DNA of 64,000 nt. It comes from Antechinus flavipes (lineage: Eukaryota). Below, piece by piece: positions 9,222-30,418 of the stretch. Positions within the stretch are counted from its first letter, which is position 1. Every line of letters starts with the position of its first letter. The notes beneath the pieces were generated by a model. The model was not told the DNA's origin. It did no database searches and was given only the letters and a program-made list of their open reading frames with translations. The DNA is taken from contig NC_067399.1 of the NCBI RefSeq assembly GCF_016432865.1, positions 499,162,001-499,226,000 of the forward strand, read 5' to 3'. The translations under genes and the position numbers were made by a program.

Positions 9222-12200
9222 CATTAATTAGCTTGATCCCTTTTCTCTTTAATCCATCAGCCTCTTTCTTCTGGCCCACATATTCTTTACCCAACTAATC
9301 CTACTAATCCATTTTCCCTACACTAATCCATTCAGGATTCCAATGTTAAAACTGAAAGAGAACTAACTTGGAGATCCTCTAATTCAGAGGTTCTTAGCCT
9401 GGAGTCCATAAACTTATTTATAAAAAAATTCTGATAGCTGTATTTCAATATAATTAGTTTCATTTGTAATCCTATGATTTTATTTTGTACACCTAAAAAT
9501 ATTATTGAGAAGGGATCCAGTTTTTACCAGACTGCCAAAGGGGTCCATGACACAAAAAAAGGTTGAGTCCCTGCTCTAGTCCAACTTCTTCATTACACAA
9601 AGGGAAAATGAGATCCAGGAAGATGACATTAATTAACCAAGGTCACACAACTATTACTAATAGCTAGCATTTACACAGTATTTTTTTTTTTAAAAGGTTT
9701 GCAAGTACTTTACATATGTTTACAGAATTTATTTGAGGCTCCCAATAACCCTGGAAGGCAGAGGCTATTATTGTCTCTATTTTATAGAGGAGGAAATTGA
9801 CACTGAGAAAAATTAAATGACTTGATCAGCGTCACACAGTTGGTACATTTGATCCTGGACTTGAATTTATGTCTTTCTCATTCCAAGTCCAAATATTTTA
9901 TGCATTGGGCAGCCTAGCTTCCAATAAGAAACAGAATAAAAATGGAACTCAGTTTCCCTGACTCCCTACACAATATTCTACATCATAAATATTAATCACT
10001 TTTACTGTATTCTCTTTAGTCCTGCCCTAAACTTCCCAGATCAGACTATCCTTCCCTTTGTGTCCCCATATGCCACCCTACCTCAATCCCCATGCTACCT
10101 GGGAAACGAGACCATTGAGTTGTTCTGAGATCTGCCGTAGAGTTTCAGTAGAAGACAGAGATCTGGAAGACATGCAAAAATGAGGTTCAATACAATTGGG
10201 TAGAAAAAGGACACAGAGACTAAGATGACTTAGACCCCTAGGCCTCTTGGGAAGACATGTGCCCTTGATACACTCACTTGCTTTCATCCATAGAACTTGG
10301 ACCGTTTTCAATATCACAATTCTGTTGGGAAGGAAATAAAAAAGGTGAGGTCACAAATTTGGTATAATTACCACTCAGAGACAAAATGGGCCCTGCTAAT
10401 TCTAACATCCCCTCCTTCCTATTCCAGGGCAGCCAAATGTGATAGAAAGCCACAGACTTGGTCTCACCCCAGTCGTAGGTTCACTTAAGCCAAAGGAGTA
10501 GATCCCTTAACTCTGGGAACCAAGCTACCCAGGAAAAGGGAAGAAGGGAGAATCCCAAAGGAATATATGTATCAGACAGTTATAATCCTGTCAGGGACAA
10601 AGTTGCAATGATGAACAACTGGGATGGTAAGAACACAAACCTGAGGCGAGGCCATGCTAGTGGGGCAGGGGGGACTGGTACGGGGGGAATGGGCACTGCC
10701 AAAGGGCACGGTGACATCTGCAGGCAGCAGGGCAGGAGCAGCACTGTCTCTGGATGCCTGTTACAGAACAAAGCAAGGGGGTTACAGGGACATGCAGGGA
10801 AGGAGGTCACTGGCAGATCTCTGGATAAAGATGGAATGTGTGGTGAGGGAGGTGGTGAAGGGGAAAAAATGAAGAGATGTTTTTCTGCTAGGGAAATAAC
10901 CCTCACAGTCAAAGTAATAGCTGCATTCCAGAATTTGGACTGAGTGTCCATTCTATCTTCAGGTCCCTCCACAGGGATGTGTGAGAAAAGGTCAGAGTTC
11001 TGAGCAGGGATGGTACAATCACTTTTACACAGGAAAGATGGTAGTAAAAGACTCCAACTTCTGTAACCGGTACATTGTTAGAGAGAGAGGACAGAACGTA
11101 GCCAAAGGAAAGAGATTACTGTCTAAGAGATTACTGTCTAAGAAATCTAGTTTACTTTCAGAAATGACCCTGGCTCCCTCTGGATCCCTCTCTCTGCTGC
11201 CTATCTAGTAGTGAATTTAGGGACACTCAAACAGATGCAATCATGCTTGGCAGACCTACTTCCTATATACCCTCAGCCCCATTTCTGGGATCAATGGATC
11301 CAGTTCTCCTCAAAGATAAATTATCTAACTAGAGTACTGAGAACAAACTGCAACTATATCTCCATCATCACCCAAACCTCTCCTCTCCAGGAAGATCCCT
11401 TTGGTCAAACAGCCATTCCAGGAGCAAGACAGCAATGGCTATCAAAGACCATTTTCTAGACTTCTAGCATCTTAGAGATTTCAATCCTTCCCTCTTTGAG
11501 GCAGTAAATCCAGAACACTATTATAGTTGGAGATCTGGTATTCTGTAAAATAAGGTATAATCCACTTGCCTTCCCTTACTGGCTCTGCCTAATAACCCTT
11601 ACTCCAAGCCTCAACTTATGAAAGAGATTCAACTCCAGATAAAGCCCAAATTACTCATAATTTATATTAGGAATCCAAGGGACACCCATCTTCTTGGAAG
11701 CTCACTGGGAGAAGAGAACAAGATTTTCTTTATCCTAACTAAGCAAGTCCAGTTTTGGATAGAAGTGGGAGATACGGAAAATGCATCTGTCTGAGGAAAC
11801 TTCAGCATGATGAGGAAAGGAAAGGCATTTTTCTGTGGGAAAAATGGAAGTGCTCCTTTAAATATGCTATGATCATTGCCCATTGGGCCCAGTTTTGCCC
11901 TGCCATTTTCTAAGATTTTGGTCATTGATTAACAAAGATGTAATGCTATTCATTTTATAAGTAAGGAAAATGAGTTCCAGAAATGCTACAGTTAAGGACC
12001 TAAGCCAAAGTACAGGGGCAAGTAGTAATTGGCAACACTGGGATTCAAACCCAGCACCTCACTCTAAATCCTGTGCTTTTTTCACTGTACCAATAAGTTG
12101 CCCTATTATCTGTAAAGGATGGTTTAAAATACCTATTTTTCCATTTGTTCTCTTCCCCACCCAAAATGTTTTCCCCTACCAATGCTTTAATTTCCAGAAA

Positions 12201-15700: not shown

Positions 15701-16826
15701 TCAAAATGTGATGCAGTCATTCCAGTTCTTTTGGGCTTCCTCTGAAAGTGTGTTTCAAAGACAATTTTCCCAGAGGTAGTAATTTTAAAAATCCTGTACG
15801 TTTTCCCAGGCCAGAAGGTTATAATGACAACTTGGAAAGGGGGATGGTTACCTAATCTCATTCCAAATTCTCCCCATGAGTTACTCAGAGGAAAAAAATT
15901 ATCTACTCCCCTCCCATAATATTACCCCTACATGTGTGGGTCCTTCCACACATCCCTTCCAGCCCCCACCATCCTTAACTCTGGACCCCCAGATCTGGAT
16001 CTGAGGCAAAGGGAATCCCCTTCCCTCTTCCCCTCCCCTGCTAATGGAGGACAGGAAGAGTGTAGAACAGGCTGGAAGAGGTTTGGAAAGGGCCCGGAGG
16101 AAGTCCAGGACAGCGTCGGAATCCCACAGAGCGGGTGGGGCAGGCCTAACAGCTGGCTTGCCCAAGCCTTCACCTTGGGGCCCTTCTGGGGTATCCGAGT
16201 TTGGGGGAGTGGGGGTGGGGGGCTCCACGAGCGGCGACACAAGGAGGGGGGCATCTCCCTCCAGGCACCAGCTAGGGGAGCGGGGGGGGGGGGGGAGTGT
16301 AAGGCCTTTCCGGGAGGCCAACAGCTGGGCCTGACGTCACGAGCCTGAGCCCGGGCCCGGGGAGAGGGTGTCACGGGCCCAAAGTCACCAAGGGGGCGAC
16401 GGGAGAGGGGCGTGGGGCGTCAGGATTTTGAGGAAGTCCGGGGGGAGGGGGGGGGAGTTCGAGGCGCGGGACCTATGAGGTTCAAGAACGGAGACTTGCG
16501 AGACTGAAGTCGAGGACCCTGAGGGAATTAAGGAGAAGGAAGGGGGGGGGGGGGGGGGGGAGGGGGAGGGGAGGACGGGGTGCGCTTCAAAGACAGGCGA
16601 AGGAAACCTGAGGAGGATGAGGAGAACGATCTGAAGGGATCCGGAAGGGGATCTGTGAGGATCTGAGAGAACCAGGGAGAGGCTGGATCGGGGAGGGGGT
16701 CTGTCAGGGTCCAGGCGGCGGGGAAGGAAGGGGCGGGGCCGAGCCCGCGAGTGTAGGGGCCGCCTCAAGAGCGTTTACCTTCTTTTTGGCCGCGGCCAAT
16801 TTGCTCTGCCGGGTCTCGTCCGCCAT
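1..16826 (-). CDS. GOLGA2: Golgin subfamily A member 2 (GM130), cis-Golgi coiled-coil matrix protein; 27 exons, last exon truncated by the window edge
   Basis: Exons in transcript order: 16779-16826, 14924-15046, 14233-14313, 10641-10757, 10278-10321, 10099-10162, 8991-9050, 8724-8804, 7862-7900, 7661-7723, 7492-7585, 7198-7304, 6715-6773, 6193-6334, 5036-5125, 4834-4941, 4608-4695, 3370-3707, 2803-2916, 2047-2271, 1892-1967, 1536-1624, 1115-1321, 924-1026, 593-699, 279-447, 1-175. All are GT-AG with consistent phases, 3011 nt open. Peptide [23 protein letters not shown]...[16 protein letters not shown]...NPCIP matches GM130 as recalled. Confidence 0.97.
279..447 (-). CDS. GOLGA2: GOLGA2 exon 26
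   Basis: [27 protein letters not shown]...; cag/gtgagt. Confidence 0.95.
593..699 (-). CDS. GOLGA2: GOLGA2 exon 25
   Basis: [35 protein letters not shown]; cag/gttagc. Confidence 0.95.
924..1026 (-). CDS. GOLGA2: GOLGA2 exon 24
   Basis: [34 protein letters not shown]; tag/gtgagg. Confidence 0.95.
1115..1321 (-). CDS. GOLGA2: GOLGA2 exon 23
   Basis: [25 protein letters not shown]...[10 protein letters not shown]; cag/gtgagg. Confidence 0.95.
1536..1624 (-). CDS. GOLGA2: GOLGA2 exon 22
   Basis: [29 protein letters not shown]; cag/gtgagc. Confidence 0.93.
1892..1967 (-). CDS. GOLGA2: GOLGA2 exon 21
   Basis: [25 protein letters not shown]; cag/gtgagg. Confidence 0.93.
2047..2271 (-). CDS. 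GOLGA2: GOLGA2 exon 20
   Basis: [32 protein letters not shown]...ARQELLQTQ; tag/gtaaga. Confidence 0.95.
2803..2916 (-). CDS. GOLGA2: GOLGA2 exon 19
   Basis: [38 protein letters not shown]; cag/gtaatg. Confidence 0.95.
3141..3305 (+). mobile_element. MIR/CORE-SINE fragment (one of many in the window)
   Basis: ctggcactgtcacttactagct...caagtgactt...taaaatga...taagatcccttccag core pattern; boundaries approximate. Confidence 0.65.
3370..3707 (-). CDS. GOLGA2: GOLGA2 exon 18
   Basis: [24 protein letters not shown]...[30 protein letters not shown]; tag/gtacgt. Confidence 0.95.
4608..4695 (-). CDS. GOLGA2: GOLGA2 exon 17
   Basis: [29 protein letters not shown]; cag/gtaggc. Confidence 0.93.
4834..4941 (-). 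CDS. GOLGA2: GOLGA2 exon 16
   Basis: [36 protein letters not shown]; cag/gttggc. Confidence 0.93.
5036..5125 (-). CDS. GOLGA2: GOLGA2 exon 15
   Basis: [30 protein letters not shown]; cag/gtgagc. Confidence 0.93.
5370..5990 (+). mobile_element. CR1/L3 LINE 3' fragment, decayed
   Basis: catccagttctgggcaccacatt (QFWAPH) and ctagggatatttaacctggaaaaaagaaactgagaggggacatgatagctgtc ([18 protein letters not shown]), typical of the CR1 RT C-terminus. Confidence 0.75.
6193..6334 (-). CDS. GOLGA2: GOLGA2 exon 14
   Basis: [47 protein letters not shown]; cag/gtaaca. Confidence 0.94.
6715..6773 (-). CDS. GOLGA2: GOLGA2 exon 13
   Basis: [19 protein letters not shown]; cag/gttagt. Confidence 0.94.
7198..7304 (-). 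CDS. GOLGA2: GOLGA2 exon 12
   Basis: [35 protein letters not shown]; tag/gtgagc. Confidence 0.95.
7492..7585 (-). CDS. GOLGA2: GOLGA2 exon 11
   Basis: [31 protein letters not shown]; aag/gtagaa. Confidence 0.95.
7661..7723 (-). CDS. GOLGA2: GOLGA2 exon 10
   Basis: [21 protein letters not shown]; cag/gtaagt. Confidence 0.94.
7862..7900 (-). CDS. GOLGA2: GOLGA2 exon 9
   Basis: [13 protein letters not shown]; cag/gtaaaa. Confidence 0.92.
8724..8804 (-). CDS. GOLGA2: GOLGA2 exon 8 (81 nt, frame-preserving, likely cassette)
   Basis: [27 protein letters not shown]; cag/gtaaga. Confidence 0.93.
8991..9050 (-). CDS. GOLGA2: GOLGA2 exon 7
   Basis: [20 protein letters not shown]; cag/gtaagt. Confidence 0.93.
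9125..9216. repeat. Compound (CAGA/CA)n microsatellite
   Basis: Directly visible. Confidence 0.95.
9385..9573. mobile_element. hAT-Charlie type MITE (MER5-like)
   Basis: Termini cagaggttcttagcct...aggttgagtccctg; degenerate 8-bp TSD ctctaatt / ctctagtc. Confidence 0.75.
10099..10162 (-). CDS. GOLGA2: GOLGA2 exon 6
   Basis: [21 protein letters not shown]; cag/gtagca. Confidence 0.93.
10278..10321 (-). CDS. GOLGA2: GOLGA2 exon 5
   Basis: [14 protein letters not shown](K); cag/gtgagt; 44 nt, phase fits exon 6. Confidence 0.88.
10641..10757 (-). CDS. GOLGA2: GOLGA2 exon 4
   Basis: [39 protein letters not shown]; cag/gtttgt; divergent, but the position and the TSMASPQ end fit. Confidence 0.82.
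12720..12771. repeat. (CA)26 microsatellite
   Basis: Directly visible, perfect repeat. Confidence 0.97.
14233..14313 (-). CDS. GOLGA2: GOLGA2 exon 3 (81 nt, frame-preserving cassette)
   Basis: [27 protein letters not shown]; long pyrimidine tract with tag acceptor; gtgaga donor. Confidence 0.9.
14924..15046 (-). CDS. GOLGA2: GOLGA2 exon 2 (basic N-terminal region)
   Basis: [41 protein letters not shown]; cag/gtgagt. Confidence 0.95.
16779..16826 (-). CDS. GOLGA2: GOLGA2 exon 1 coding part from the second ATG
   Basis: ATG GCG in good Kozak context; [16 protein letters not shown] then gtaaac. The upstream ATG at 16863 is out of frame by 1 nt (see findings). Confidence 0.93.
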
Positions 16827-17182
16827 CCCGAGCCGGGGAGGGGGAAGGCGGGGGGGGCCACATCACCGTGATCCCGGCAACCACCGCGGCATTCCATCCA
16901 GCAGCCACCGCGCCGCTCCCGCTCCTCCCATAGGGAGGGTAAAGGGCGGGGTCGGACAGCGTCGCGCATCCCAGCGTCTGCGCCTGCGCCTGCGCCGATC
17001 TCTAGTACTCTCTCGCGCGCGCGTCGTCCAGCCCCGCCCGCGATGCTACTTGGCTCCAGCATTTCTATTCCTTCAGATTACACTCTGACTGGCGCGGGCT
17101 TTCCTACCTCCTCTGCGAGAGTGCGCTCGTCCTAGACCAGGAGCGAGCCTCGGCCTGCCCGCTTCTCTACTCCCTGGCAGTC

Positions 17183-17244
17183 CTGGAGTCCCACTCGCTG
17201 CAGAAACCCTCGGGAGGGGAGCCCAGGACCCCGGGCCTCCGGAG
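17183..17244 (+). CDS. SWI5: SWI5 exon 1 coding part (CUG start inferred)
   Basis: PRTPGLRR followed by the donor AG/gtgcga; CTG in the context gtcCTGg. Confidence 0.75.
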
Positions 17245-20200
17245 GTGCGACGGAGAAGAGTCTCCTCTTGGATCCCTCCCCAGAAATCCGGCATCCTTCA
17301 GAAAAACCCTCCTCAAGAGACCTCCGTCCCTTCCACGACCCGTCCTCCAAACTGAGCGCCTAGCACGGTCGCTGTTTCAGTGGGCGCTTAATAAGTGCTT
17401 GTTCTTCCTTTCCTACTCGCCCATCCTGAGCAGTCCCCATAGATCCTATCCACTTCAGAAACTTCCATCTCAAGATCCGATTCCTCCTTTAACAGACCGA
17501 CCTTCAGCGAATTCTTATCCTAGACCTCAATCCCCTTTAAAGAAACCAATTCAAGGATCCATCCCTTTCCATTGATACATTTTTCCCCCAGGGACCCTCG
17601 GCGCCTCTGAGACACCGCTTATGGATCTCTCCCCTTGGAGTAGACTCTCCTTATCCCTTCCCATCCCATCCCAAATGCCCTGGCCTGAACCACTTGGTCT
17701 AGTTTCCCTTTCCCACCTGTCTTCACTTCCAGAGGGCTCCCGGGCTTTCAAGTCTTCCCTCGCCCCGCAAATCCTGGGTCCTAACCATCCCTTTTCCTTG
17801 GTTGCTTTCCAGGGCACGATTGGGACTCTCCAAACGCCATTCAGCGGCTTTTCGATCCCCTGTGAGTATGTCTGCACGCACTCTTACATCCTTCTTTCCT
17901 CCTCGTGCCATACAGGTGGTATATCTTTCCCCAATCTCTCTGGGCCTCCTCAGTTACATCGCAGCAGTCTTTTTCTTGATCTCTTTGATTCTGTAATAGA
18001 AATTTTCACAGCATCTTTTCCAAATCTTTCCTTTTCTCATGCCTCTAGTGTCTTCTTCCACCTATACAACAAGATGTATGTTGCCATAATAAACATGTTG
18101 CTTATTAAATGTATGATGAAGTGAAGACTTATCTGCCTCCTACTTGTCTAAAGGTAACAGATCCAGGCAGGAAATCTGATGTTATTTCATGTAATTTCCA
18201 CTTATCTCAAAATAATTAGGTTAGCTTTGGACAGCACTTCATCTGAGTAAGGTGAGGATGACAAAACATAGAGGGAGAAATATTTTGAGATAAGTGGAAA
18301 TTACATGAAATAACATCAGATTTCCTGCCTGGATCTGTTACCTTTAGACAAGTAGGAGGCAGATAAGTCTTCACTTCATCATACATTTAATAAGCAACAT
18401 GTTTATTATGGCAACATACATCTTGTTGTATAGGTGGAAGAAGACACTAGAGGCATGAGAAAAGGAAAGATTTGGAAAAGATGCTGTGAAAATTTCTGTT
18501 ACAGAATCAAAGAGATCAAGAAAAAGACTGCTGTGATGTAACTTCCCTCTGCTTTCCTTAGAACCTTGTTCTATAATTTCTCTCTACAATTTTTACCTCC
18601 CAACTGGTTGCTTCCGCTCTACCTTTAAAAACACAGGTCTCCCCAATCTTGAGAGAGGAGAAAAATAGACAAAAAACTTTGTTTAATCCTACTGCCCCAC
18701 TAGTTACCATCCTATTTCTCCTTTACCATTTTTTGCCAAACCAACCTGCTGCCTTCATCACCCACTTGCACTTTAACTCTTGGCAGTCTTATTTCTGCCC
18801 TTTCTACTCATCCCCAGTGGCCTTTTTTTTTTTTAATCCTTCATTCTTCTTACCTCCTTGCAGAAATTCTTTGCTGCTTCCCTCATAGAACTCTCTTCCC
18901 ACTTTATGAGTTAATACTGTTCTGCTTTTTTCAATTACTTGACTATTCATTCCTCTGACTTCTTTTTCTAAATTCCCTATTCTTCTCTTTCTATACTTGA
19001 TAATTTACTCTGTGGTTTTCAATGGTCATTTCTTTTACTGCTTGGTCATCACTTATGCTAATGATTTCCAAATCTGTTTCTTTCATTCAGGCCTTTAATA
19101 TGAGTTTTACATTTCCAACTGCATCCTGGATATTTTTCCATTTAGTGTCTTGCTTTCATCTCACTAGTTACAATCACTGCATCTAAAACTGATCTCATCA
19201 GTTTTGTCTTGTCAGATTTGCGGCTTCTTCCTGACTTCCATGCAATCATCTGTGATCTTTCCCTCTCTCTTATCCCCAGGTTTCTCAGATTCTTTATGTT
19301 CTTCTTTGTAATGCCTTTCTTACCTGTCCCTTTTCATTTCCATTGAAACAGCTCTAGTTCAGGTTCTTAACCTCCTTATATATGAACTATTGGCCTCCTT
19401 ATTCTTATTATGTTTTCCCTCCAGCTCATCATTTACACTGTCATTTCCAGATTAATTTTGTTAAAACGCATCACATTACTCTCAAGCTCAAAGACCTTTA
19501 ATAACGCCTAAATAGCTAAAAGATCAGTTTGATACGCAGAAGCAACTTCTGAGCCAATTATATAAGACTTTATACAATCTGGTCTTGTTCTGCTTTTCTT
19601 TTTTTTAAATTGTAAGTTTATTTTTTCCTGAGACAATTGTATTTAGGTGACTTGCCCAGGGTCACACAGCTAGGTTAAATATCTGAGATCAGATTTGAAC
19701 TCAGATCCTCTTGACCTCAGGGCTAGTTCTCTATCCATTGTACACATAGCTGCCCCCTTATTCTACTTTTCCAATCTCATTTCTAAATGTTTCTTCCAGT
19801 CATGCTGGTTTCATTGTCCCCCCAAAATGCCAAGTTCATTTCCTTCTCTGTATTTACCCCAGCCTGGGATGCTCTTCCTTTTTATTTATCTGAATCCTAC
19901 TTTTTTTTTCCTTAAGAAAAAAAAGTTAATATTATCCCTAATTTTAAGGCAATTTCAGTAGAAGTTAGATTAGAAGCATTTTGTGATCTTTTTAAAAAAG
20001 CAAAATCATGGTGGCTAGCATTAATTAGTCCCAGGTCATTCTCATTTCTTTCTCAAAGCATTCAGTATTTAGCATATCCTCAAATCCCCTGATTTATCTC
20101 CAGGAATGGTTATCATTCTATCTCCATGCGTACCTTCACAATGAAAAGCTCTCATATTCCTCTTGTAGCCTATCATTCCATCTTTCCCTATATTTTACCC

Positions 20201-23200
20201 CTCCTAAATCTGTTCTTCATCTCATAATGACTTCTAGTCTATCCAGTCTTCAGTACTTTCTCTACTTTGATCTTGTGTTAAGCAGTTTGACTCCATTTTT
20301 TCCTTACTGCTTTGTCCCATTGACAATCATGCCTTGCCCAAAATTAACTTCACATTACTCCTACCACCTACTTTTCATAATCCTATTTGTGTTGCTGAAT
20401 AAAGCTGAAGAGTATCATGCAACCAAGCTGACTGGATACATTACGAATTTAGATTATCTAACCTTAATGAGACTCTTCCTGTAGCAAAGCAATCTTTTTA
20501 TTCCTCCCTAATTGATGCTCTATCCCATTTTGCACAGATACTATTTCATGTTTTATCTTCTTTCCTCAAACCTCCCATACCTCCCCCTCTTTTCCACCTT
20601 CTCAGTTAAGGATCTCAACTGTTTTTTCTACACGTTTTAAATATTTTTAAAATTAAGTTTTATATTGGATATTAGACGGGATGAAAGAAAACTGGGATAC
20701 TAATTCATTGAAACAACTGTGTGAACTAATTCTTCCATTTTTTGTTTGTTTTTTGTTTTCTTGGTTCTGCTTTATTTGACTTTGCATCAGTTCATATAAG
20801 TCTTTACGTGTTTCTCTGTATTCTTTTTAGGCTATATTCTAGTGTGTTTTTTTATTTTAAAAAAAATTTTTAAATAACTTTTGACATTCACTCTTGCAAA
20901 ACTTTGTGTTCCAAATTTTTTTCTCCTCTTCATCCTCTGCTTTAGACAGCAAGTAATTGAATATATGGCAATTCTTCTATACATATTTCCTTTTTTTTTT
21001 TTAATTTTTAAAACTTTTTATTTTCAAAACATATGCATGGATAATTTGACAACATTGACCCTTGCATAGCCTTGTGTTTCAGCTTTTCTCTTTACCCTCA
21101 TCCCCTCCTCTAGATGGCAAGCAAACCAATATATATTAGACATGTTAAAATATTTATACATATTTTGACAATTATTCTGCTGCACAAGAAAAATGATCCA
21201 ACCATTCTTGAGAGCAATTTGGAACTATGACCAAAGGGCTATAAAATTGCATATTCGTTGATCCAGCAATAATACTTTGTATCTCAAAGGCATCCAAAAA
21301 AAGGGGAAAGGACCTATTTGCATGAAAGTATCTATAGCAGCTTTTTTTAAAAATTGGAACTCAAAGGGAGGCTCATCAACTGGGTCATAGCTAAATAAGG
21401 TGCAATATATGTTTGAAATGTAATATTATTGTGCTATAAGAAATAACACAGGAAGATTTCAGAAAAACCTGGAAAGATATATGAACTGATTCATAGTGAA
21501 GTGAACAGAACCAGGAGAACTTTGTATATATTAACAGCAATATTGTATGATGATTAATTGTGATGACTTAGTTCTCAGCAATAAATAATTCTAGATGATC
21601 CCAAAAGACTAATGATAAGGCATAGTATCCTCTTCCAGAGAAAGAATTGATATTGATTGAATACTAACTGAAGCATGCTATTTTCTCTTTCTTTCTTTTT
21701 TTTCCTTTTATTTGTGACTAATATGGAAATGTTTCACATAATTGCATATGGATAAGCTATATATCCATCTCAGGGAGTGATGGAAGGATAGAATTTGGAA
21801 CTCAAAACTTTAAATATGTTTTTTTTAAATTGGGGGGGAATATATATTTTTTTAACATTCATTTTTTAAAATTCTGGATTCTCTATTCTCGTTCTCCCTT
21901 ATCCATTGACAAGGCAAGTAATATGAATTATACATATGAATTCATACGAATATATTTCCATATTAACTATGTTGCCAAAAAAAAAAAAAAGGAAAAAAAA
22001 GTATGCTTCAGTCATCCTCCTAATTCAGAATTCATCAATTTTCTTTGTGAACCTTTTGGAATTGTCTTGGATCACTGTATTGATTAGAGTAGCTAAGTCT
22101 TTAACAGCTGAGTCATTACAATATTGTAGTTATTATGTACAATGTTCTAGTTCTGCTCACTTTACTTTGTATTGGCTTATATGAGTTTTAGGTTTTTCTG
22201 AAACCATCCCCTTTATAATTTCTTAAAGCATAATGATATTTCATCAGAATCACATATCACAACTTGTTTAGCCATTCCCTAATTCATAGGCAACCTATCA
22301 ATTTCTAGTTTTTTGCCACCACAAGAAAGAGCTTCTATAAATAGATTTGCTTATGTAAGTTCTTTTCCTTTCATCCTTTTAGGATACAAGACTTAGTAGT
22401 GATTTTGCATAATTCCAAATTGTTCGTTTGCTGAATTTCCATCCATGTTTTCCTCCATCAGCTGCAGGTTTACCCCAGAGTTTTGTCTTATGCTTTTTTC
22501 TTTCTTTGCTACATTCTCTCACCTGGTGAACATATAAACTCCCATGAGTTAAATTGGCAAATTTATGCAAAAGACTTCTAGATCTATATAATCAGTTCTT
22601 GTCTTTCTTAAGCTGAAATTTTGCATCATCAACACTATTCTACATTTTAAACTCTTTTTTTCTTAAGTATCACAAATTCAACATGTCTAAAACAGAATTC
22701 ATGATTTTTTATTTCTTCCCCAAATCAACCCCTCTTCTGAATTACTCCACAGGGCATATTGCTTATCCAGTCACCTAGGTTCACAGGTTATCCCTGACTC
22801 CTCTTTTCCTTTACAGTCTTATTGTTTCTTTCATTACATCATCTTCTCTTGCATCTCTACCCTTCTCTCTGCTTATACAACCTGTCACTCTAGTTCAAAC
22901 CCTCATCACTATTGAAATACCTTACTAATTGGTATTCCTGCCTCAAGTCTCACTTTACTCAAATCCATTTTCCCTCACAGCTGCCAAATGATTTTCTGAA
23001 ACTACAGGGTGATCATATCATTCTTTCCTCTCTTCTCAGTAAACCTGAGTGATTTCCTGTTACTTTAGTATCAACTGTAAATCTCTCTGATACTTAAAAT
23101 TCTTCACAATCTGGTCCCTTCCTATCTTTATAGTCTTTTACCACATCTTTCTTTACTGTCTAACCAAACTGGGGTACTTGTGTCCTTCACACACAGTACT

Positions 23201-25410
23201 CTATCTCCCATCTCTGTACTTTTACACTGGCTGTCCTCCATGCCTGGAGTGCCAATCCATGACTTCTTTCAAAACTCAGTTCAAATGCCACCTTTTTTCA
23301 CAATTCTCTGCTAGCTGTTAATGCCTTCTCAGAGATTATACCTTCATTCTAGTGTGTAGGAGGTGGGGAAGGGCCTGTTTTTTGGTCCATTATAATTTCC
23401 TTTAGTAAATTAAATTTAACAGTCCTTCGTGACTGTTATTTAACTTTTAATCCCTGTTAGCATTCCCACTGTGCTTGGCATAAATCATCTAGTCTAATCT
23501 CATCATTTTATAGATAATTGAGGTCCAGAGATATCAAGGAGATATATGGGATAATCTATGGCAGTTCATTGAACCTCAAGGAATAATTTCATTATTCTTT
23601 GTCAAGAATTAGTTTTTCCTATTCTTCATCTTGAATTATCTTCTTCAATTCCTTCTGAATCATTCTAAGGACATGTTCCAGGGGGGCTACTCTTTAAACC
23701 TTAAGTCTCTCGCTTTCTTATTTTTCCTCCAAGCTGTCTCTAAGAAGAAAGAAAGACTAAAGAGGAAAGTACTGAAAAAACTCTAATCCCAACCCTTGTC
23801 ACTTGGTAGATAGAAAGGTAAAATTCTTATAGCACTTGAAGTTTTACAAAGTCCTTTCTTTACAACAATCCTGGGAAGTAGGTAGTGCAAACTGAGATAG
23901 AGGAATTGTTCTGGGATATCAGATGAGTTAAGGCTATGCATACAGCCTGAAAGTGTCAACTCTAAGCCAAGGGCCTTTCCACTGTACTATTCTGCTTTTG
24001 GCAGGAGAGAATTGGAAAGAGAACTCAGAAATTCAGTTGATATGGATACTAGAAGACTTATTATATTGGCAGATAGGTAGGTCAATACTCACATCTTTTC
24101 TTGTTATGCCATTTAGATGCCTACTCCCAAATTTGGCCAGGCTAATGAGACAAATGAGGAATCCCTAAGGCTGGAAATCCAGGAGCTAAAGCAAAAGAGA
24201 GATACCTTGGATCAAGAGATCTCCCAGTTGATGGCTGAGTACATTTATTACTAAATTTGTTGTGAAACACTTCACCTGTGTCTGGGATTTGTTTATTAAA
24301 TAACATAGTCCGAGGACCCACAATATACAAAGCATCATGTTAAGTGTTCAAAGGATGTTGTAAGAAGGAAGGAAGAATAGTAGCACAGATGTACATCATT
24401 TTACAGTTTATAAACATTAGTTTGAGGCTCACAAAACCTCAGTAAAGTTATAGTACAAACCTTAGTGTCCCGCTTTTATAGATAAAGAAGCTGGGAATCA
24501 GACAGACTTTCCCCGTGTTTTATAGCTAATAAGTAGCAGGGTCAGGACTAGAACCTCATTGTTTTCTGACTCTACATGTGGCCTCTGTGCTATACCACAT
24601 GATCTCTTCCATAGGGAATTTTCCAGTTTATGGAAGGAGGCCCAACCTCTTCCCTTGGGAATACTAATGGTGTGGTAACAAAACGCTAGACCTAACATTT
24701 GACTCTAGAACTAACTTGTTTTATCTGTCACACCTTCATTTTCCTTCTCTAAGAGGGTTGGACTAGATAATTGGAAAGGTTGATTCTACCTCTTAAATTC
24801 AATTATTGAACTAGGAGATACACACCTGAAAAAGATTGTAAGAATACTTACAAAATAGCATCATCAGGCATTTTGGGTACGAGGTTGAGACATAGGAGTT
24901 AGACTGTCATGAGTTTTACTCTTTGAATCGGTGGATTGAGAACTTTGTATTTCTAGAGTTCCTTTCCCTTGTAGAGTTCATAAAACTACTTAAACTTCAA
25001 AGAGTCTTTGGAAGGGAGCTCACAAATTTTGAAAATCAAATCAGTACCTTAACCTATATTTCACTAGCCTCTTAGAATCTATATTATTCCTTCCACCAAA
25101 AGTAAATAGTTTGTAGTTGTTTTTTTTTGTTATAATAAAAAAGAGGAGCGTGAAAAGAGCAGGGACCTAGGTGATAGAAAAGGCACCATTTACAAAGATA
25201 CCTCAAACTTCTATTTTAGTATTTAAGACCCTCTTGGAACTCTTTCCTAAGCTGCTTGTTGGATTAATATTGAATATGATAAATTGGCTAGCTTTTACTG
25301 TTTGAGTAAGAATTGATATTTGCATTCTATATAGATATCCATATTCATGTTGTACTCTCTCCCAAGTACACTATTTTTTAATGTTTTATTTTGACACAAG
25401 TTTCTTCCCT

Positions 25411-25445
<35 letters not shown>

Positions 25446-28400
25446 ATTCCTCCAGAACATTAGAGTGAACCTAATCCAGTGATTGATATTGATCTTGTCA
25501 CTTTCCTCTTTTGTCATTTATCAGTTAATAAAAAGGAAGAATCTATCCTTTAATAATTCTATACCAACATTGCTCATTGAATTTGACCCACAAATAAAGT
25601 ATATGACTTAACTTGGTGTTATTTTTGACATTGTTGTAGTCCCTATGTCCAGCGGTTTTGGCTATGCTTCTTTCATTTGGCATCATGCTTCCTGGACCTT
25701 CCCACACTTATATGAATTCTATGAATGATATCCATCATTCCTTATAGCATAATAACATTCCATGGTATTAATATAGTTTCTTTGTTCAGCTGTTGACCAC
25801 TTGTTGGGCACATATTTTGTTAGCAGCTTTTCTTATTACAGATAATGCTCTTACGAATACATTTGTTACTTAGAGATTGTTTCTCATTCACCCATTTGGA
25901 GTATAAATCCTACAGTGTGTTCCCTATGGCAGACTATAAACAGTTTAATCACTTTTCTTGCAGAGTTCTAAAGTGTTTTTCAAAACAGCACCATGTGGTG
26001 AAATAAATGTGAGATTTGACATCAGAAGATTGGAGTTCAAATGTGATCTGCCCATTCTGCTCTGTGCAACTATGGCCTACTCACTTCACTCCTTCTTTAA
26101 TTTCCCTCAATTATAAAATGAAAGTTGTACATATATAACCTATATCAAATTGCTTGCTGTCTTGGGGATGGGGAAAGGAGAAAAATCTAGAACTTAAAAT
26201 CTTACAAAAGTTTAATGTTGTAAACTATCTTTACATGTAATTGGAAAAAAAACTATTAAATTAAAAAAAGAGAGAGATGTCAGACTAAAGGATCTTTCAA
26301 TTCCCTGAATTTTTGAGCTTTCTCTACAAATAGTTAATGAGAAAAGCATAGCCCTCTCTTTCCTCCTTTGTTCTCACGCAATCCAACCCTAGTTTCTTTG
26401 CTGGGTAACAGTAAATCATATTTCTATAGCTTTTTAAAGACTTCCCTTACAAATTCACTGTAAAGTAGCCTGTATAAATATTAACACCATCTTATAGATA
26501 AGGAAACTGGTTCAGAGAAGTGTTTTGTCAGTGGTCACATAGCCAATAAATGTAGAACTGTTACTATCTAATTCCAATGCTTTATTCATGACCACCAAGC
26601 CCCTGTCTACATGTCATTTTACTTTAGGAGACATGTTATTCTAGATTTCTATTGCAATCTCTAATTTTTTTTTACAACTTTTCTATTATCTCCATGTCTT
26701 TCTGTGTTTCTCAGAGGCTATGTTGTATCTGAGTTGGACGACCACATTTCCCTGCTTCATGAATACAATGACATTAAAGATGTGGGCCAGATGTTAATGG
26801 GAAAATTAGGTGAGTGATTGGAAATTTCCTGAATTCAGATAGCACCTCTATCCTCTCCATATCCATTGTCTTTGTCTTTCCTAGAGTAATCCAATACTTT
26901 CAACTCTGTTGTCACTGCTTTGTGTATATTCTTCTAATTCCTTGTCTTTAACTCAATACCAGTTGCACATTTAAGAAGATTTTAGGGGCTTTTAGGTTGT
27001 GATAGATGTCTGTGATTTCCTTAAGTCTTAAATGGGGATAGTCTTTTGATAATTTCCTCACCCAACTCTGGTAGATAACTGAAGAGCTTTAAATGTTTCC
27101 AGTTGCTAACTTGTTAATGCAGCAACCTTAAAAAAAACAGAACAGCTCTTTTTTGCTCAATTATCCATTTTGTATCTACTAAGAATCTCTTTCTGTGGAA
27201 GCTTTTAGTCATAACTTGGGTGTCTATCTGGGATGACTAGGTATAATCCTGTATGGATGTAGAATAAAGCTATAGATGTGCTTTTAAATTCTTCTTAAAT
27301 TCCTTTTTAATTATGAACTCAACAGACATTTCAAGATACAGAGTAAAAGAGGCTCATATATGAAGCTGAACTTATTTTACATACATTTTTCAAAGTATGT
27401 ATTAAATTTAACAAGGTAGTATTTAATCATACTTTCCCTTTTTTTTTTTTTATAGCATTTCCATCACAACCCAAAAACACCCCCTAAAATGGAAGCTTTT
27501 CATTGTTATAAATGTAAACAAGCAAAATAAACCAACACGTTGGCCAAGTCTGGAAATGCATTTACCATTTTTCCATTATTTCTTTACTAAGGGAGATGAG
27601 ACCTGTTTCATGAAGTCTTTCCTCTTTCACTTTACATTACTGTAATCATCTTGTTAGTTGTTCTGATCCTATACAACTCACTATACATAAGATTGTATAA
27701 GTCTTCCCATATTTCTCGTTAATTCTTCACATTCCTAATTTCTTATGAGACAATAATACACTATTCCATTTTTGGAACATCATTTCATTCAGTCATTCCC
27801 CAAATGAAGAGCATCCAGTTTGTTTCAAGCTCTTTTCTTTTAAGCTCTTCTCCAACTTCATCTACAGTCTATCCTGTTGTATATACACAGAGAGCTATTT
27901 AGCAATTAATAATCATTTTAGATTGTTGTCAGAAGATCTGTTCACTTATTTTATGAGGGCTAGCAGAAGCCCATAGGTCTTTAAGGACAGTTCTGTGAAA
28001 CTTGGAGAATTTCCCTCTTACTATAGCTACGAAAAGGTACCCAATCTGATTCTCTTCTAATTTTTTTAATGATGTGATTTTTAATTGTCAGGTCTCTTAT
28101 CCATTTTGAACTTATACATTATATTGTAGACGTTAATTTAAACTTACTAAACTGCCTTCCAGTTCTTGTCAAATACTTCTCCCAAGTATTTTATGTTCTA
28201 TGGATTATTAAAATTGAGTTAAAAAACACATTTGCATATAGTCTGTTTCTAGATGCAATGTAATAGTCAATGGGGAAAATTTTTTTTGCATCAAGTATGT
28301 CTGATGCATACTTACATATCAGATATATATGTCTAATAATCAAGACATATAAGAAACTATCACAAATGTAGTATATAACTTAAGTCATTCCCCAAAGGAT

Positions 28401-30418
28401 ATGAATAGACATCAAGAGGAAAATTGCAAACAACCATGTGAATAATTGTTCCAAATAACTAATAATTAGAAGTGAAAATCAAAACAATTCTTAGGGTTTC
28501 ACCTCACATCCAAATATGATAAAAGATGGGAATAGTCAGTGTTGGAGGCTTTCAGAAAGAAAGGCATAAGAAAATACTTAATAAAGTTGTGAATTGATCT
28601 AATCAGTTTGGCAAACAGTTGGGATTATACTAAAAAAGTGACTAAAATAGTTGTATCCTTTGATCCAAAGAGACAAGTACTAATTACATACATGCCCCTT
28701 ATATATCAGTAATAAAACAAAAAAGCAACATATACATCAAAATGTTTATAGTAACTTTTTTTAAATAAAAGTTTTTTTCAGTCAGCAAAAATTTACTCTC
28801 ATTCCTACCCCAATCTCCATGTTCCATCTCCCACCCCCACTTCTTCTAATTGAAAACTAGAGGAAAACAAATTTCTATATTGGTCATATCCAAAAAAATA
28901 TTTATCTCATTCTGTACTCTTGAGTCTACCTCCTTGTCAGGAAGTAACATCATGTTTCATCATTAGTCCTCTGGAATCATGTTGGTCATTACTGTGGTAA
29001 AAATTCATAATTTCATTTGATTTTATCATGTTATATAAATTGTTCTCCTAACTTAATTCTGTATCAGTTCATGGAATTTTCCCTAGTTTTCTCTGAACAT
29101 CTCCTTCATTATTTCTTACAGCATAGTAGTGTTTCATCACATTTATATACCATAACTTTTCATCCATTTATGGGCATACCCTCAGATTGCTATGCTTTGC
29201 CCCTCAAAAAAAAACCTCTTAATATCTTTGTATAATTAGAGTTTGTTTTGGTTAGGGTCAATTCTTCCTTTGACCTATCTTCTTTTGAATTATTCTTCCC
29301 CTCTTTTTCTCCTTTCTGTTATTTTCTTCTTGAGAAGTAGCATTTTTCAAAGTAGCAAAGACCTGGAAACAGAGTTCCTGCCCATCCATTGAGGAATGGC
29401 TGAATACATTGTTTGTATATTAACATGATAGAATAATATTGCACTATAAGAAACAATGTCTATGAAGAATACAGAAAAGCAGGTTTATGAACTACAACAA
29501 AAGGAAGCAAGCAGAACCAGGGAAACACCGTGCAATAACAGTGAGAGAGAAAGAACAGTAAGAAATTAAGTGTAATATTATGAAATTATAGTGAACATAA
29601 CAGATTTGTTATCTTTATGTACAATCCAGTGTTTGCTACTAAAGTTCAAAAAAATTATAATGAACAAGTTGACCTCAAAGGAGAGATATGAGAATGCATT
29701 TCCTGACCTTTTTGGTGTGTGGAACAATACTGAATATAACATTTGACTGGATATGTTGGTTTTGTTTGGGGGATTCCCCCTTTTTTTATTCAGTTATAAG
29801 GGAGAGCTCTTTGATAAAGGGGATAAAGCCCTCTGGTATAAAAATATATTTTCTTTCATGCATTTTTTGGAACATGGCTGATGTGGAAATGTATTTTCCA
29901 TGACTGTAAGTTTTTATAACAGATTTTTTATTTTTTTCTCAGTGAAGAGGGGAAGAAGAGGGAGAGAATTTGGAATTGAAAGGGTAAATTGGAGGGAAAA
30001 AAGTGAATTGGGTGTCATCAGACCAGACTTCTTCCAAGAGGAGAATGCTGAGGTGTAATCTTTCAGTATTTGTGCATGGATGAGATGATGATCTGGGCCC
30101 AAAAGAAAAAAGAATTAAGAGCATAGAAATTGGTTTAACCTTGTAGGAAAGAGTCACAGGGAAAAATGAATGGAGTAAAAAATGTGAGGATTGATAAATG
30201 GAAGTCTTGAAACTTTAGGTGAAAAATTTGAATTTGACAAGATGGGTTTGAGGAGTTTGTGTTCAAAAATATCAGGTCATTTTCATGCCAGGATTTTGAC
30301 AGCATCTTCTTTCCTAATTTTCATTTCTCTCATGACATCATTCTGCTATTTTAGCCAGATCAGAGGTGTGACCACCAAGGAGCTGTATCCTGAATTTGAT
30401 CTGGATATGAATGACTAA
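17183..30418 (+). CDS. SWI5: DNA repair protein SWI5 homolog (SWI5-SFR1 complex); 5 exons, predicted CUG start
   Basis: Exons 17183-17244, 17813-17861, 24117-24238, 26715-26809, about 30355-30418. Peptide (L)ESHSLQKPSGGEPRTPGLRR-ARLGLSKRHSAAFRSP-MPTPKFGQANETNEESLRLEIQELKQKRDTLDQEISQLMAE-GYVVSELDDHISLLHEYNDIKDVGQMLMGKL-(AQ)IRGVTTKELYPEFDLDMND. The last exon is 1 nt short of frame as assembled. Confidence 0.92.
17813..17861 (+). CDS. SWI5: SWI5 exon 2
   Basis: ttgctttccag acceptor; ends AFRSP/gtgagt; 49 nt. Confidence 0.88.
17952..18543. repeat. 263-bp near-perfect inverted repeat with a 66-nt spacer
   Basis: Arms 17952-18214 and 18281-18543 checked base by base; only two mismatches (17961/18534 and 17997/18498). 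Confidence 0.98.
18550..19600 (+). mobile_element. L2 LINE fragment, decayed
   Basis: Pyrimidine-rich L2 hallmarks (accatcctatttctcctttacc; atgctaatgatttccaaatctg; atcactgcatctaaaactgatctcatc). Boundaries approximate. Confidence 0.6.
19621..19757 (-). mobile_element. Marsupial tRNA-derived SINE (WSINE1-like)
   Basis: Reverse complement of ggggcagcta...gagttcaaatctg...ctgtgtgaccctgggcaagtcac with an A tail. Confidence 0.85.
21010..22420. mobile_element. Cluster of L1 3'-end fragments in alternating orientation (about 21010-21200 minus, 21201-21830 plus, 21850-22420 minus)
   Basis: Marsupial L1 ORF2-end/3'UTR motifs (gagagcaatttggaactatg; atgaactgat...agtgaagtgaacagaaccaggaga). Confidence 0.75.
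22421..23400 (+). mobile_element. L2 LINE 3' fragment
   Basis: actcccatg...tatgcaaaagacttctagatctata; aaattcaacatgtctaaaacagaa; tcaaaactcagttcaaatgccacct. Confidence 0.7.
24117..24238 (+). CDS. SWI5: SWI5 exon 3
   Basis: ttag/ATG CCT ACT...EISQLMAE/gtacat; 122 nt. Confidence 0.93.
25415..25441. repeat. (CA)n microsatellite
   Basis: Directly visible. Confidence 0.95.
26715..26809 (+). CDS. SWI5: SWI5 exon 4 (Swi5 domain core)
   Basis: GYVVSELDDHISLLHEYNDIKDVGQMLMGKL; ctcag/gtgagt. Confidence 0.96.
27300..29900. mobile_element. Old L1 fragments, mixed orientation
   Basis: Decayed L1 ORF2 3' and UTR motifs (aaggatatgaatagaca; agaagtgaaaatcaaaacaa; ccattgaggaatggctgaata). Boundaries approximate. 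Confidence 0.6.
30355..30418 (+). CDS. SWI5: SWI5 exon 5 (last coding exon)
   Basis: QIRGVTTKELYPEFDLDMND* is the SWI5 C-terminus; junction phase is off by 1 nt. Confidence 0.88.

What the first reader, a model, noticed from the sequence alone, without database searches (positions are those of the whole stretch)
17952..18543. 263-bp near-perfect inverted repeat (99.2%) in SWI5 intron 2: potential long dsRNA hairpin or cruciform
Seen: arms 17952-18214 and 18281-18543 are exact reverse complements except at two positions, with a 66-nt spacer, starting only 90 nt after the exon 2 donor. Both mismatches (G17961:T18534, T17997:G18498) are G-U wobbles on the plus (SWI5 sense) strand, so the pre-mRNA could form a fully paired 263-bp duplex. 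Two transitions on the same strand is weak evidence alone. I recognise no transposon in the arms, and there is no TSD. Knowledge: duplexes this long are substrates for ADAR1 and Dicer and can activate PKR or MDA5, and long close inverted repeats are fragile, recombinogenic DNA. Inference: a very recent inverted duplication, or one homogenised by gene conversion, that may affect splicing or editing of a homologous-recombination gene.
Basis: partly seen in the sequence, partly recalled or inferred. Interest (0 to 1): 0.85.

Follow-up and report, generated by a model that had tools for sequence, protein, structure and literature searches.

The report
Template-switch hairpin in antechinus SWI5 intron
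A 263-266 bp near-perfect inverted repeat in intron 2 of the yellow-footed antechinus SWI5 gene is present as described, and comparison with three other marsupials shows it is a young, lineage-specific copying error (a 329-nt stretch re-copied backwards in place), an unusually long case of a known kind of mutation, with no evidence that it does anything.

Summary
The inverted repeat is in the sequence as described. The arms are 17952-18214 and 18281-18543, with two mismatches that are both G·U on the + strand. They extend to 266 nt with one more mismatch, leaving a 60-nt loop.

The window is Antechinus flavipes (assembly GCA_016432865.2). The repeat lies in SWI5 intron 2, 90 nt after the exon 2 donor.

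Orthologous introns from Tasmanian devil and monito del monte hold one forward copy of the left arm. It is followed by the reverse complement of the antechinus spacer, then the right flank. Dunnart also has a single forward copy of the left arm joined to the left flank, but a deletion of its own removes the spacer region.

The ancestral order was therefore L-A-S'-R and antechinus now has L-A-rc(A+S')-R. One event re-copied about 329 nt in reverse complement, which inverted the spacer and duplicated the arm.

This fits the four-point template-switch model (order 3-1-2-4), with a 2-nt microhomology at the return junction. It is not a MITE, not a snap-back duplication, and not an insertion into a pre-existing small hairpin.

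All three arm differences are derived changes in the left arm.

The event is young, but it rests on one assembly. Effects on RNA editing, small RNAs, splicing or DNA fragility are untested.

It is a new, very long member of a known kind of mutation.

The parts
17805..17861 (+). SWI5 exon 2 (..RARLGLSKRHSAAFRSP), donor GT at 17862-17863
   Evidence: tblastn of devil SWI5 P0265 on the window; sequence read
17952..18214 (+). Left arm (A): the ancestral copy, in its original place and orientation, continuous with the left flank in all outgroups
   Evidence: Collinear forward alignment to devil L002 11017-11275, dunnart L001 10339-10554 and monito del monte L004 about 10940-11173. Its purine content (0.418) is at the median for this intron.
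18215..18217 (+). ATT: forward copy of the first 3 nt (TTT) of the ancestral spacer with one T>A change. It marks the first switch point and extends the arms to 266 nt.
   Evidence: Outgroups have TTT after ..CTCAAAATA; the reverse-complement copy has AAA at 18278-18280
18218..18280 (-). Spacer or loop: the ancestral 63-nt segment S', now present only in reverse complement (inverted in place)
   Evidence: Window 18218-18543 aligns in minus orientation as one block to devil 11017-11338 (92.3%) and to monito del monte 10940-11237 (71.9%). The spacer is purine-rich (0.652, top 1.3% of 66-nt windows in the intron).
18281..18543 (-). Right arm (A'): the derived reverse-complement copy of A. It keeps the ancestral base at both arm differences.
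   Evidence: Purine content 0.582, top 2% of 263-nt windows of this pyrimidine-rich intron.
18542..18550 (+). Return junction: the arm ends ..GTAACT and joins TCCCTCT. Devil and monito del monte have GTGTCT before TCC(C/T)TCT, so CT is a 2-nt microhomology (4 of 6 with GTnnCT) and about 4 nt (GTGT) were lost.
   Evidence: Alignment A2; devil sequence
24117..24239 (+). SWI5 exon 3, the acceptor end of the intron that holds the repeat (intron 2 = 17862-24116)
   Evidence: tblastn

Best explanation
The repeat is the product of one local rearrangement on the Antechinus lineage. The ancestral intron read L-A-S'-R, where A is 263 nt and S' is 63 nt. In antechinus about 329 nt (A plus S') were re-synthesised in reverse complement and put in place of S', giving L-A-rc(S')-rc(A)-R. 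This yields a 263-266 bp perfect stem whose loop is the inverted S'. The most likely mechanism is an inter-strand template switch during DNA replication. The nascent strand leaves its template at the end of A (point 1) and lands on the opposite-sense strand at the far end of S' (point 2). It copies backwards through S' and A to the start of A (point 3). It then returns to its own template at the start of R (point 4) through a CT microhomology, dropping about 4 nt. Shown here: the ancestral order, the inverted spacer, the direction of copying (left arm to right arm), the junction sequences, and lineage specificity. Inferred: the replicative mechanism; a young age, at very roughly one tenth to one sixth of the antechinus-devil divergence; and near-neutrality. 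The consequences are also inferred. The SWI5 pre-mRNA should fold a fully paired 263-bp intronic duplex, which is a likely ADAR substrate that is removed with the intron. The DNA is a close long palindrome that is prone to deletion. I see no evidence of a selected function.
For: The window is 100% identical to A. flavipes GCA_016432865.2 (L003). Devil L002 shows window 17372-18214 forward, window 18218-18543 as a single minus-strand block onto 11017-11338, and window 18542-19600 forward from 11343. Monito del monte L004 shows the same single-copy order and aligns collinearly with devil. Dunnart L001 has A forward and joined to L. Both arms share 5 derived substitutions and 2 indels of the antechinus lineage. 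The 3 arm differences are all derived in arm 1, and arm 2 has the ancestral base each time. Composition predicted the result before the orthologs were seen: the spacer and right arm are purine-rich in a pyrimidine-rich intron. The devil sequence has no long hairpin (-76 kcal/mol), against -484.9 in antechinus. The template-switch model and its creation of perfect hairpins in one step, including loop inversion, are described in PMC10710096 and PMC7954356.
Against: Only one antechinus assembly was available, so neither independent reads nor other Antechinus species were checked. The first junction shows no microhomology when devil is used as a stand-in for the ancestor, and it carries one unexplained T>A change. 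At 326-329 nt the copied stretch is far longer than typical short-range template switches (median 12, maximum 128 in great apes). Product structure alone cannot separate a replicative switch from break-and-rejoin routes. A. flavipes is reported to be highly heterozygous, so the three arm differences could be allelic variants sorted by polishing, which makes the age estimate soft.
Confidence: 0.8

Rival explanations
1. The same product arose by breakage and rejoining, not replication. In this model a 329-bp micro-inversion of A+S' had a staggered break across A, with nicks 263 nt apart. Fill-in and end joining then left A duplicated in inverted orientation on both sides of the inverted S'. This is the staggered-break model proposed for inversion breakpoints in Drosophila (from my own knowledge).
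For: The topology (inverted centre flanked by inverted duplicates) is exactly what that model predicts. The junctions carry a small loss (GTGT), a 0-2 nt microhomology and one odd base, all compatible with end joining.
Against: The stagger (263 nt) would be four times longer than the double-stranded core (63 nt), which is an awkward intermediate. Nothing in the sequence requires a double-strand break. Local template switching is documented to give this pattern.
Confidence: 0.12
2. The repeat is an assembly artefact: a chimeric or fold-back long read, or a consensus or polishing error, in the PacBio CLR + wtdbg2 + Pilon assembly.
For: Only one assembly supports it. CLR libraries do contain palindromic chimeras (my own knowledge). 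Many first-reader notes report near-perfect local inverted copies of 76-548 bp elsewhere in this same assembly (unverified).
Against: The structure is embedded between unique collinear flanks and returns to forward orientation. The loop is genomic sequence (the inverted S'), not an adapter. Coverage was about 100x long reads plus 50x short-read polishing, so one chimeric read should not win the consensus. The arms differ at three sites.
Confidence: 0.07
3. The repeat is a palindromic non-autonomous DNA transposon (MITE or foldback element) inserted into the intron.
For: It has long terminal inverted repeats with a short loop, and near-identical arms as in a fresh insertion.
Against: There is no target-site duplication and no other copy in 64 kb. 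Decisively, the orthologous site is not empty. Devil, dunnart and monito del monte carry the left arm in place and joined to the left flank, and devil and monito del monte also carry the spacer in the opposite orientation.
Confidence: 0.01
4. The hairpin is a selected RNA element, such as an endo-siRNA or miRNA-like source or a regulator of SWI5 splicing or editing, and pairing is kept by selection, which would explain why both mismatches are G·U.
For: Both stem mismatches preserve pairing on the sense strand. Template-switch hairpins have seeded miRNA genes (PMC10710096).
Against: Two transitions would keep pairing by chance about one time in four. The third difference (18215) is an A·A mismatch. 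The element is too young for conservation to be informative. Rfam gives only a sub-threshold chance match (MIR1435, 27.8 bits against a gathering score of 94). A 263-bp stem is far from the roughly 35-bp stem of miRNA precursors.
Confidence: 0.04

Closest known systems
Template-switch mutations under the four-point model (Loytynoja & Goldman; Walker et al. 2021, PMC7954356; Monttinen et al. 2022/2023, PMC8794818 and PMC10710096)
   Same: A stretch of the descendant aligns as the reverse complement of adjacent ancestral sequence. One event creates a perfect inverted repeat and inverts the segment that becomes the loop. The switch points lie within a few hundred bases of each other, and the flanks stay collinear.
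   Different: Scale. The copied stretch here is 326-329 nt and the stem 263-266 bp, against a median of 12 nt and a maximum of 128 nt in the great-ape gold-standard set and 30-55 nt stems in the miRNA study. Point order is 3-1-2-4, whereas 1-4-3-2 and 3-2-1-4 are reported as the majority patterns.
Fold-back (snap-back) inverted duplications and templated inverted insertions at double-strand breaks (e.g. PMC11724301, PMC10622511, PMC7467729)
   Same: Local inverted duplication with a short spacer, and little or no microhomology at the junctions.
   Different: Snap-back priming keeps the spacer in its ancestral orientation and adds the copy next to it. Here the spacer is inverted and its forward copy is gone. 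The yeast events are about 5-34 bp or else chromosome-scale.
Inverted duplications at inversion breakpoints (staggered-break model, Drosophila and Anopheles; my own knowledge)
   Same: An inverted central segment flanked by inverted duplicates of sequence from one breakpoint.
   Different: Those inversions span kilobases to megabases with duplications that are short by comparison. Here the duplication (263 bp) is four times the inverted core (63 bp).
Closely spaced inverted Alu pairs and other intronic long dsRNA (ADAR substrates; my own knowledge)
   Same: An intronic inverted repeat predicted to form a long duplex in the pre-mRNA.
   Different: Made from unique sequence by one duplication, not from two transposon insertions. 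About 99% paired, against roughly 80-90% for Alu pairs. No editing data are available for this locus.

Membership tests
Template-switch mutation (four-point model) | A descendant segment aligns in reverse complement to nearby ancestral sequence, while a forward alignment fails | tested here: met
   Window 18218-18543 aligns only in minus orientation to devil 11017-11338 (92.3%, 326 nt) and to monito del monte 10940-11237
Template-switch mutation (four-point model) | Outgroups show the simple linear state, so the change is derived on one lineage | tested here: met
   Devil and monito del monte both have L-A-S'-R, and dunnart has L-A in single copy. Shared antechinus-specific changes occur in both arms.
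Template-switch mutation (four-point model) | Three collinear fragments (L to 1, 2 to 3, 4 to R) explain the whole region with no leftover sequence | tested here: met
   Every base of 17952-18543 is accounted for. The only extras are one T>A at 18215 and the loss of about 4 nt (GTGT) at the return junction.
Template-switch mutation (four-point model) | It arose during replication, not during break repair | not testable with these tools
   Product structure alone does not tell the two apart
MITE / palindromic DNA transposon | Target-site duplication flanking the terminal inverted repeats | tested here: not met
   The flanks are ..CCTCCTC and TCCCTCTG.., with no direct repeat
MITE / palindromic DNA transposon | Orthologous empty site lacking the whole element | tested here: not met
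   The outgroups retain the left arm in place, and two of them retain the spacer as well
MITE / palindromic DNA transposon | Multiple dispersed copies in the genome | tested here: inconclusive
   There is no other copy in the 64-kb window. Exact-word scans of metagenome and viral collections were blank, which is uninformative for a marsupial. No genome-wide search was possible.
Snap-back (fold-back) inverted duplication at a double-strand break | The spacer between the arms keeps its ancestral orientation | tested here: not met
   The spacer is the reverse complement of the devil and monito del monte sequence
miRNA or other described RNA family | Match to a curated covariance model at its gathering score | tested here: not met
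   The best hit, MIR1435, scores 27.8 bits against a gathering score of 94 (E = 0.24)
SWI5 (Pfam PF07061) host gene | Exons encoding the Swi5 domain on the + strand, with the repeat between exon 2 and exon 3 | tested here: met
   Exon translations match marsupial SWI5 proteins that carry PF07061

The most novel reading that the evidence does not exclude
The antechinus lineage, or dasyurids more widely, may undergo unusually long (100-550 nt) local template-switch copying at an appreciable rate, seeding many near-perfect long hairpins in introns. This SWI5 event would then be one verified example of a genome-wide class. First-reader notes list more than ten similar near-perfect local inverted copies in about 40 Mb of the same genome, none of which I checked.
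Probability: 0.15. Interest if true: 0.6.

Novelty: new member of a known kind. Interest (0 to 1): 0.38.

Why it matters
This is a cleanly resolved natural example of a single mutation creating a 263-bp perfect hairpin from unique sequence. Two outgroups fix the ancestral order, and both junctions are readable to the base. It extends the observed size range of local template-switch events well beyond what primate surveys report, towards the FoSTeS/MMBIR class of rearrangements. It also offers a natural test case. A fully paired 263-bp duplex inside the pre-mRNA of a widely expressed DNA-repair gene can be examined for ADAR editing, small-RNA production, splicing effects and palindrome instability in an outbred wild mammal. 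It is not a new kind of element, and nothing indicates function.

Tried and rejected
1. **MITE or foldback transposon.** Rejected: there is no target-site duplication, and the left arm and spacer are present in situ in the orthologs.

Rejected: the AGAGGGA in the spacer is the reverse complement of an ancestral direct TCCCTCT at the start of S'. Ancestrally the two heptamers were direct repeats, not inverted ones.

3. **Snap-back synthesis with a 66-nt loop.** Rejected because the spacer is inverted.

4. **Old repeat homogenised by gene conversion.** Not needed, because the second arm is absent from all three outgroups.

5. **Independent reads through called ORFs.** A protein search with the 167-aa ORF 17621-18121 spanning the flank and arm found nothing.

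6. **Exact 22-25-mers of the arm** in metagenome and viral contig collections found nothing, which is uninformative for a marsupial.

7. **Rfam** gave no match at threshold.

8. **More outgroups.** DNA for wombat, brushtail possum, sugar glider and Gracilinanus SWI5 loci could not be fetched because the files were too large. P0004 is not on record.

9. **Spliced SWI5 protein.** I did not type it into any tool. Orthologs were reached through an exon-4 translation given by reference.

Full report
**1. The observation**

The inverted repeat is in the sequence as described. The repeat finder and a base-by-base comparison give arms at 17952-18214 and 18281-18543. They are 263 nt long and reverse-complementary except at two positions:
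- 17961 G against 18534 T
- 17997 T against 18498 G

On the + strand both are G·U pairs. The match runs three more bases inward (18215-18217 against 18278-18280) with one A/A mismatch. The arms can therefore be read as 266 nt around a 60-nt loop. Nothing outside the arms pairs.

Several checks show this is far from chance:
- Neither the arm nor the loop has another copy in the 64-kb window.
- The next-best close inverted repeat in the window is 46 nt at 72%.
- The + strand RNA folds as one uninterrupted stem at -484.9 kcal/mol, against -142 for shuffles (z = -66.7).
- Rfam gives only a sub-threshold chance match.

**2. Where it sits**

The window is Antechinus flavipes, assembly GCA_016432865.2, chromosome CM028218.1. 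Locus L003 from that record is 100% identical to window 17000-19600, so L003 is not independent evidence.

SWI5 lies on the + strand. By comparison with devil and dunnart SWI5 proteins, its exons are at:

| Exon | Window coordinates |
|---|---|
| 1 | about 16872-17244 |
| 2 | 17805-17861 |
| 3 | 24117-24239 |
| 4 | 26714-26810 |
| 5 | 30360-30415 |

The exon 2 donor GT is at 17862.

**3. A clue from composition**

The intron is pyrimidine-rich on the + strand.

| Segment | Purine fraction | Position in the intron's distribution |
|---|---|---|
| Left arm | 0.418 | at the median |
| Right arm | 0.582 | top 2% of 263-nt windows |
| Spacer | 0.652 | top 1.3% of 66-nt windows |

They suggested that the spacer as well as the right arm is in inverted orientation. 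The orthologs then confirmed this.

**4. Orthologs**

No eukaryotic genome collection is directly searchable here, so I reached the orthologs in three steps:
1. I searched with a translation of SWI5 exon 4 given by reference.
2. I picked out the marsupial SWI5 proteins from the results.
3. I fetched their genomic loci.

*Tasmanian devil (L002)* aligns in three blocks:
- window 17372-18214, forward, onto 10432-11275
- window 18218-18543, as one block in minus orientation, onto 11017-11338 (92.3%)
- window 18542-19600, forward, from 11343

Devil therefore has a single A, followed by the reverse complement of the antechinus spacer (S', 63 nt), then GTGTCT, then the right flank.

*Monito del monte (L004)* is a distant outgroup. 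It has the same single-copy order and aligns collinearly with devil.

*Fat-tailed dunnart (L001)* has A forward and joined to the left flank. A deletion of its own then removes the end of A, S' and about 185 nt of right flank. It also carries a separate retroposon insertion.

The ancestral order is therefore L-A-S'-R, and antechinus has L-A-rc(S')-rc(A)-R.

**5. Direction and timing**

I polarised each difference using the outgroups. Both arms share five unambiguous derived substitutions and two indels of the antechinus lineage. The copy was therefore made from the antechinus-lineage left arm.

The three arm differences are all derived in the left arm, and the right arm keeps the ancestral base each time:
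- 17961 A>G
- 17997 C>T
- 18215 T>A

Divergence figures:
- arm against arm: 0.76%
- arms against devil A: 7.3-8.1%
- flanks against devil: 4.3-7.7%

This places the event at very roughly one tenth to one sixth of the depth of the antechinus-devil split. Taken at face value, that is after the roughly 5.9 Ma split of A. flavipes from A. stuartii and A. argentus.

With two or three events the error is several-fold. The species is also reported to be highly heterozygous. The differences could be allelic variants sorted by polishing, in which case the event could be younger still.

**6. Junctions**

*Inner junction.* Here ..CTCAAAATA is followed by ATT and then AGGTTAGC... The outgroups have TTT after ..AAAATA, and the reverse copy has AAA at 18278-18280. 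ATT is therefore a forward copy of the first three bases of S' with one change. I see no microhomology here when devil is used as a stand-in for the ancestor.

*Outer junction.* The right arm ends ..GTAACT and joins TCCCTCT. Devil and monito del monte have GTGTCT before TCC(C/T)TCT. CT is therefore a 2-nt microhomology (4 of 6 bases match as GTnnCT), and about four bases were lost.

This is explained away: the AGAGGGA is the reverse complement of an ancestral TCCCTCT at the start of S'. Before the event the two heptamers were direct repeats.

**7. Mechanism of origin**

One event explains everything. About 329 nt (A+S') were copied in reverse complement and replaced S'.

In the four-point description of template switching (PMC7954356) the points lie in the order 3-1-2-4:
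- Point 1: the nascent strand leaves its template at the end of A.
- Point 2: it lands on the opposite-sense strand at the far end of S'.
- Point 3: it copies back through S' and A to the start of A.
- Point 4: it returns to its own template at the start of R.

Template switching is documented to create perfect hairpins and to invert loops in a single step (PMC10710096; PMC8794818).

The devil sequence has no long hairpin (-76 kcal/mol over 356 nt), so the structure was created de novo.

What is unusual is the size. The copied stretch is 326-329 nt, against a median of 12 and a maximum of 128 in the great-ape gold-standard set.

A break-and-rejoin route gives the same product and cannot be excluded. 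That route would be a micro-inversion with a 263-nt staggered break. Snap-back priming at a break is excluded, because it would leave the spacer in its ancestral orientation.

**8. Is it an artefact?**

The assembly used about 100x PacBio CLR reads (canu correction, then wtdbg2) and was polished with Pilon using 50x short reads.

Points against a chimeric-read artefact:
- The structure is embedded between collinear unique flanks.
- The loop is genomic sequence, not an adapter.
- The arms differ at three sites.
- High coverage argues against one chimeric read winning the consensus.

Points that keep the possibility open:
- Only one assembly supports the structure.
- Unverified notes list many similar near-perfect local inverted copies in this genome.

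I put the artefact risk at about 7%.

**9. What it does**

Nothing tested here shows a function. The following rests on established knowledge and is not tested here:
- The SWI5 pre-mRNA should form a fully paired 263-bp intronic duplex, which is the kind of substrate that ADAR enzymes edit heavily. It would normally be removed with the intron.
- At the DNA level, a 99% identical palindrome with a 60-nt spacer is expected to be prone to hairpin or cruciform formation and to deletion.

The G·U pattern is weak evidence for selection. Any transition in one arm keeps pairing on one strand or the other, two transitions would both favour the sense strand about one time in four, and the third difference is an A·A mismatch.

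**10. Verdict**

It is refined to a single template-switch-type event that also inverted the spacer. The functional suggestions remain untested.

This is a new and very long member of a known kind of mutation. It is of moderate interest as a clean worked example and as a natural test case for the handling of long intronic dsRNA and for palindrome stability.

Noticed in passing
window 24117-24119 (start of SWI5 exon 3): Antechinus reads MPTPKFGQ where devil has VPAPKFGQ and dunnart VPTPKSGQ, so a Val-to-Met change creates an ATG at the first codon of exon 3. The NCBI model for A. flavipes SWI5 (XP_051836061.1, 82 aa, P0266) starts at this ATG, omits exons 1-2, and ends in a different C-terminus (..KLAFPSQPKNTP) instead of IRGVTTKELYPEFDLDMND.
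   Followed up: partly
L001 10554-10557 (Sminthopsis crassicaudata): Dunnart has an independent deletion of about 295 nt of ancestral sequence, corresponding to window 18174 to about 18728 without the duplicated arm. It removes the end of A, the spacer region and about 185 nt of right flank. It is unrelated to the antechinus event.
   Followed up: partly
L001 10597-10760 (Sminthopsis crassicaudata): A dunnart-specific insertion of about 165 bp that begins with a T-run and is flanked by a 12-nt direct repeat (ATCACCCACTTG). It looks like a retroposon fragment inserted in reverse orientation with a target-site duplication.
   Followed up: no
window 16000-17400: A CpG-island-like GC peak (0.62-0.69) lies between the 5' end of GOLGA2 (minus strand, upstream) and SWI5 exon 1, which suggests a shared bidirectional promoter. 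GC skew changes sign near 16800-17000.
   Followed up: no
L004 1-37124 (Dromiciops gliroides): The record carries a gene call of 114 aa (PF15060 PPDFL) whose range spans the whole GOLGA2-SWI5-TRUB2 locus. This is probably an over-extended gene model.
   Followed up: no
other windows of the same genome (notes s1-179139, s1-189084, s1-189057, s1-189045, s1-196627, s1-198807, s1-215361): First-reader notes describe many near-perfect local inverted copies of 76-548 bp in this assembly. If these hold up, they are the same class of event as the one resolved here. I could not read those windows.
   Followed up: no
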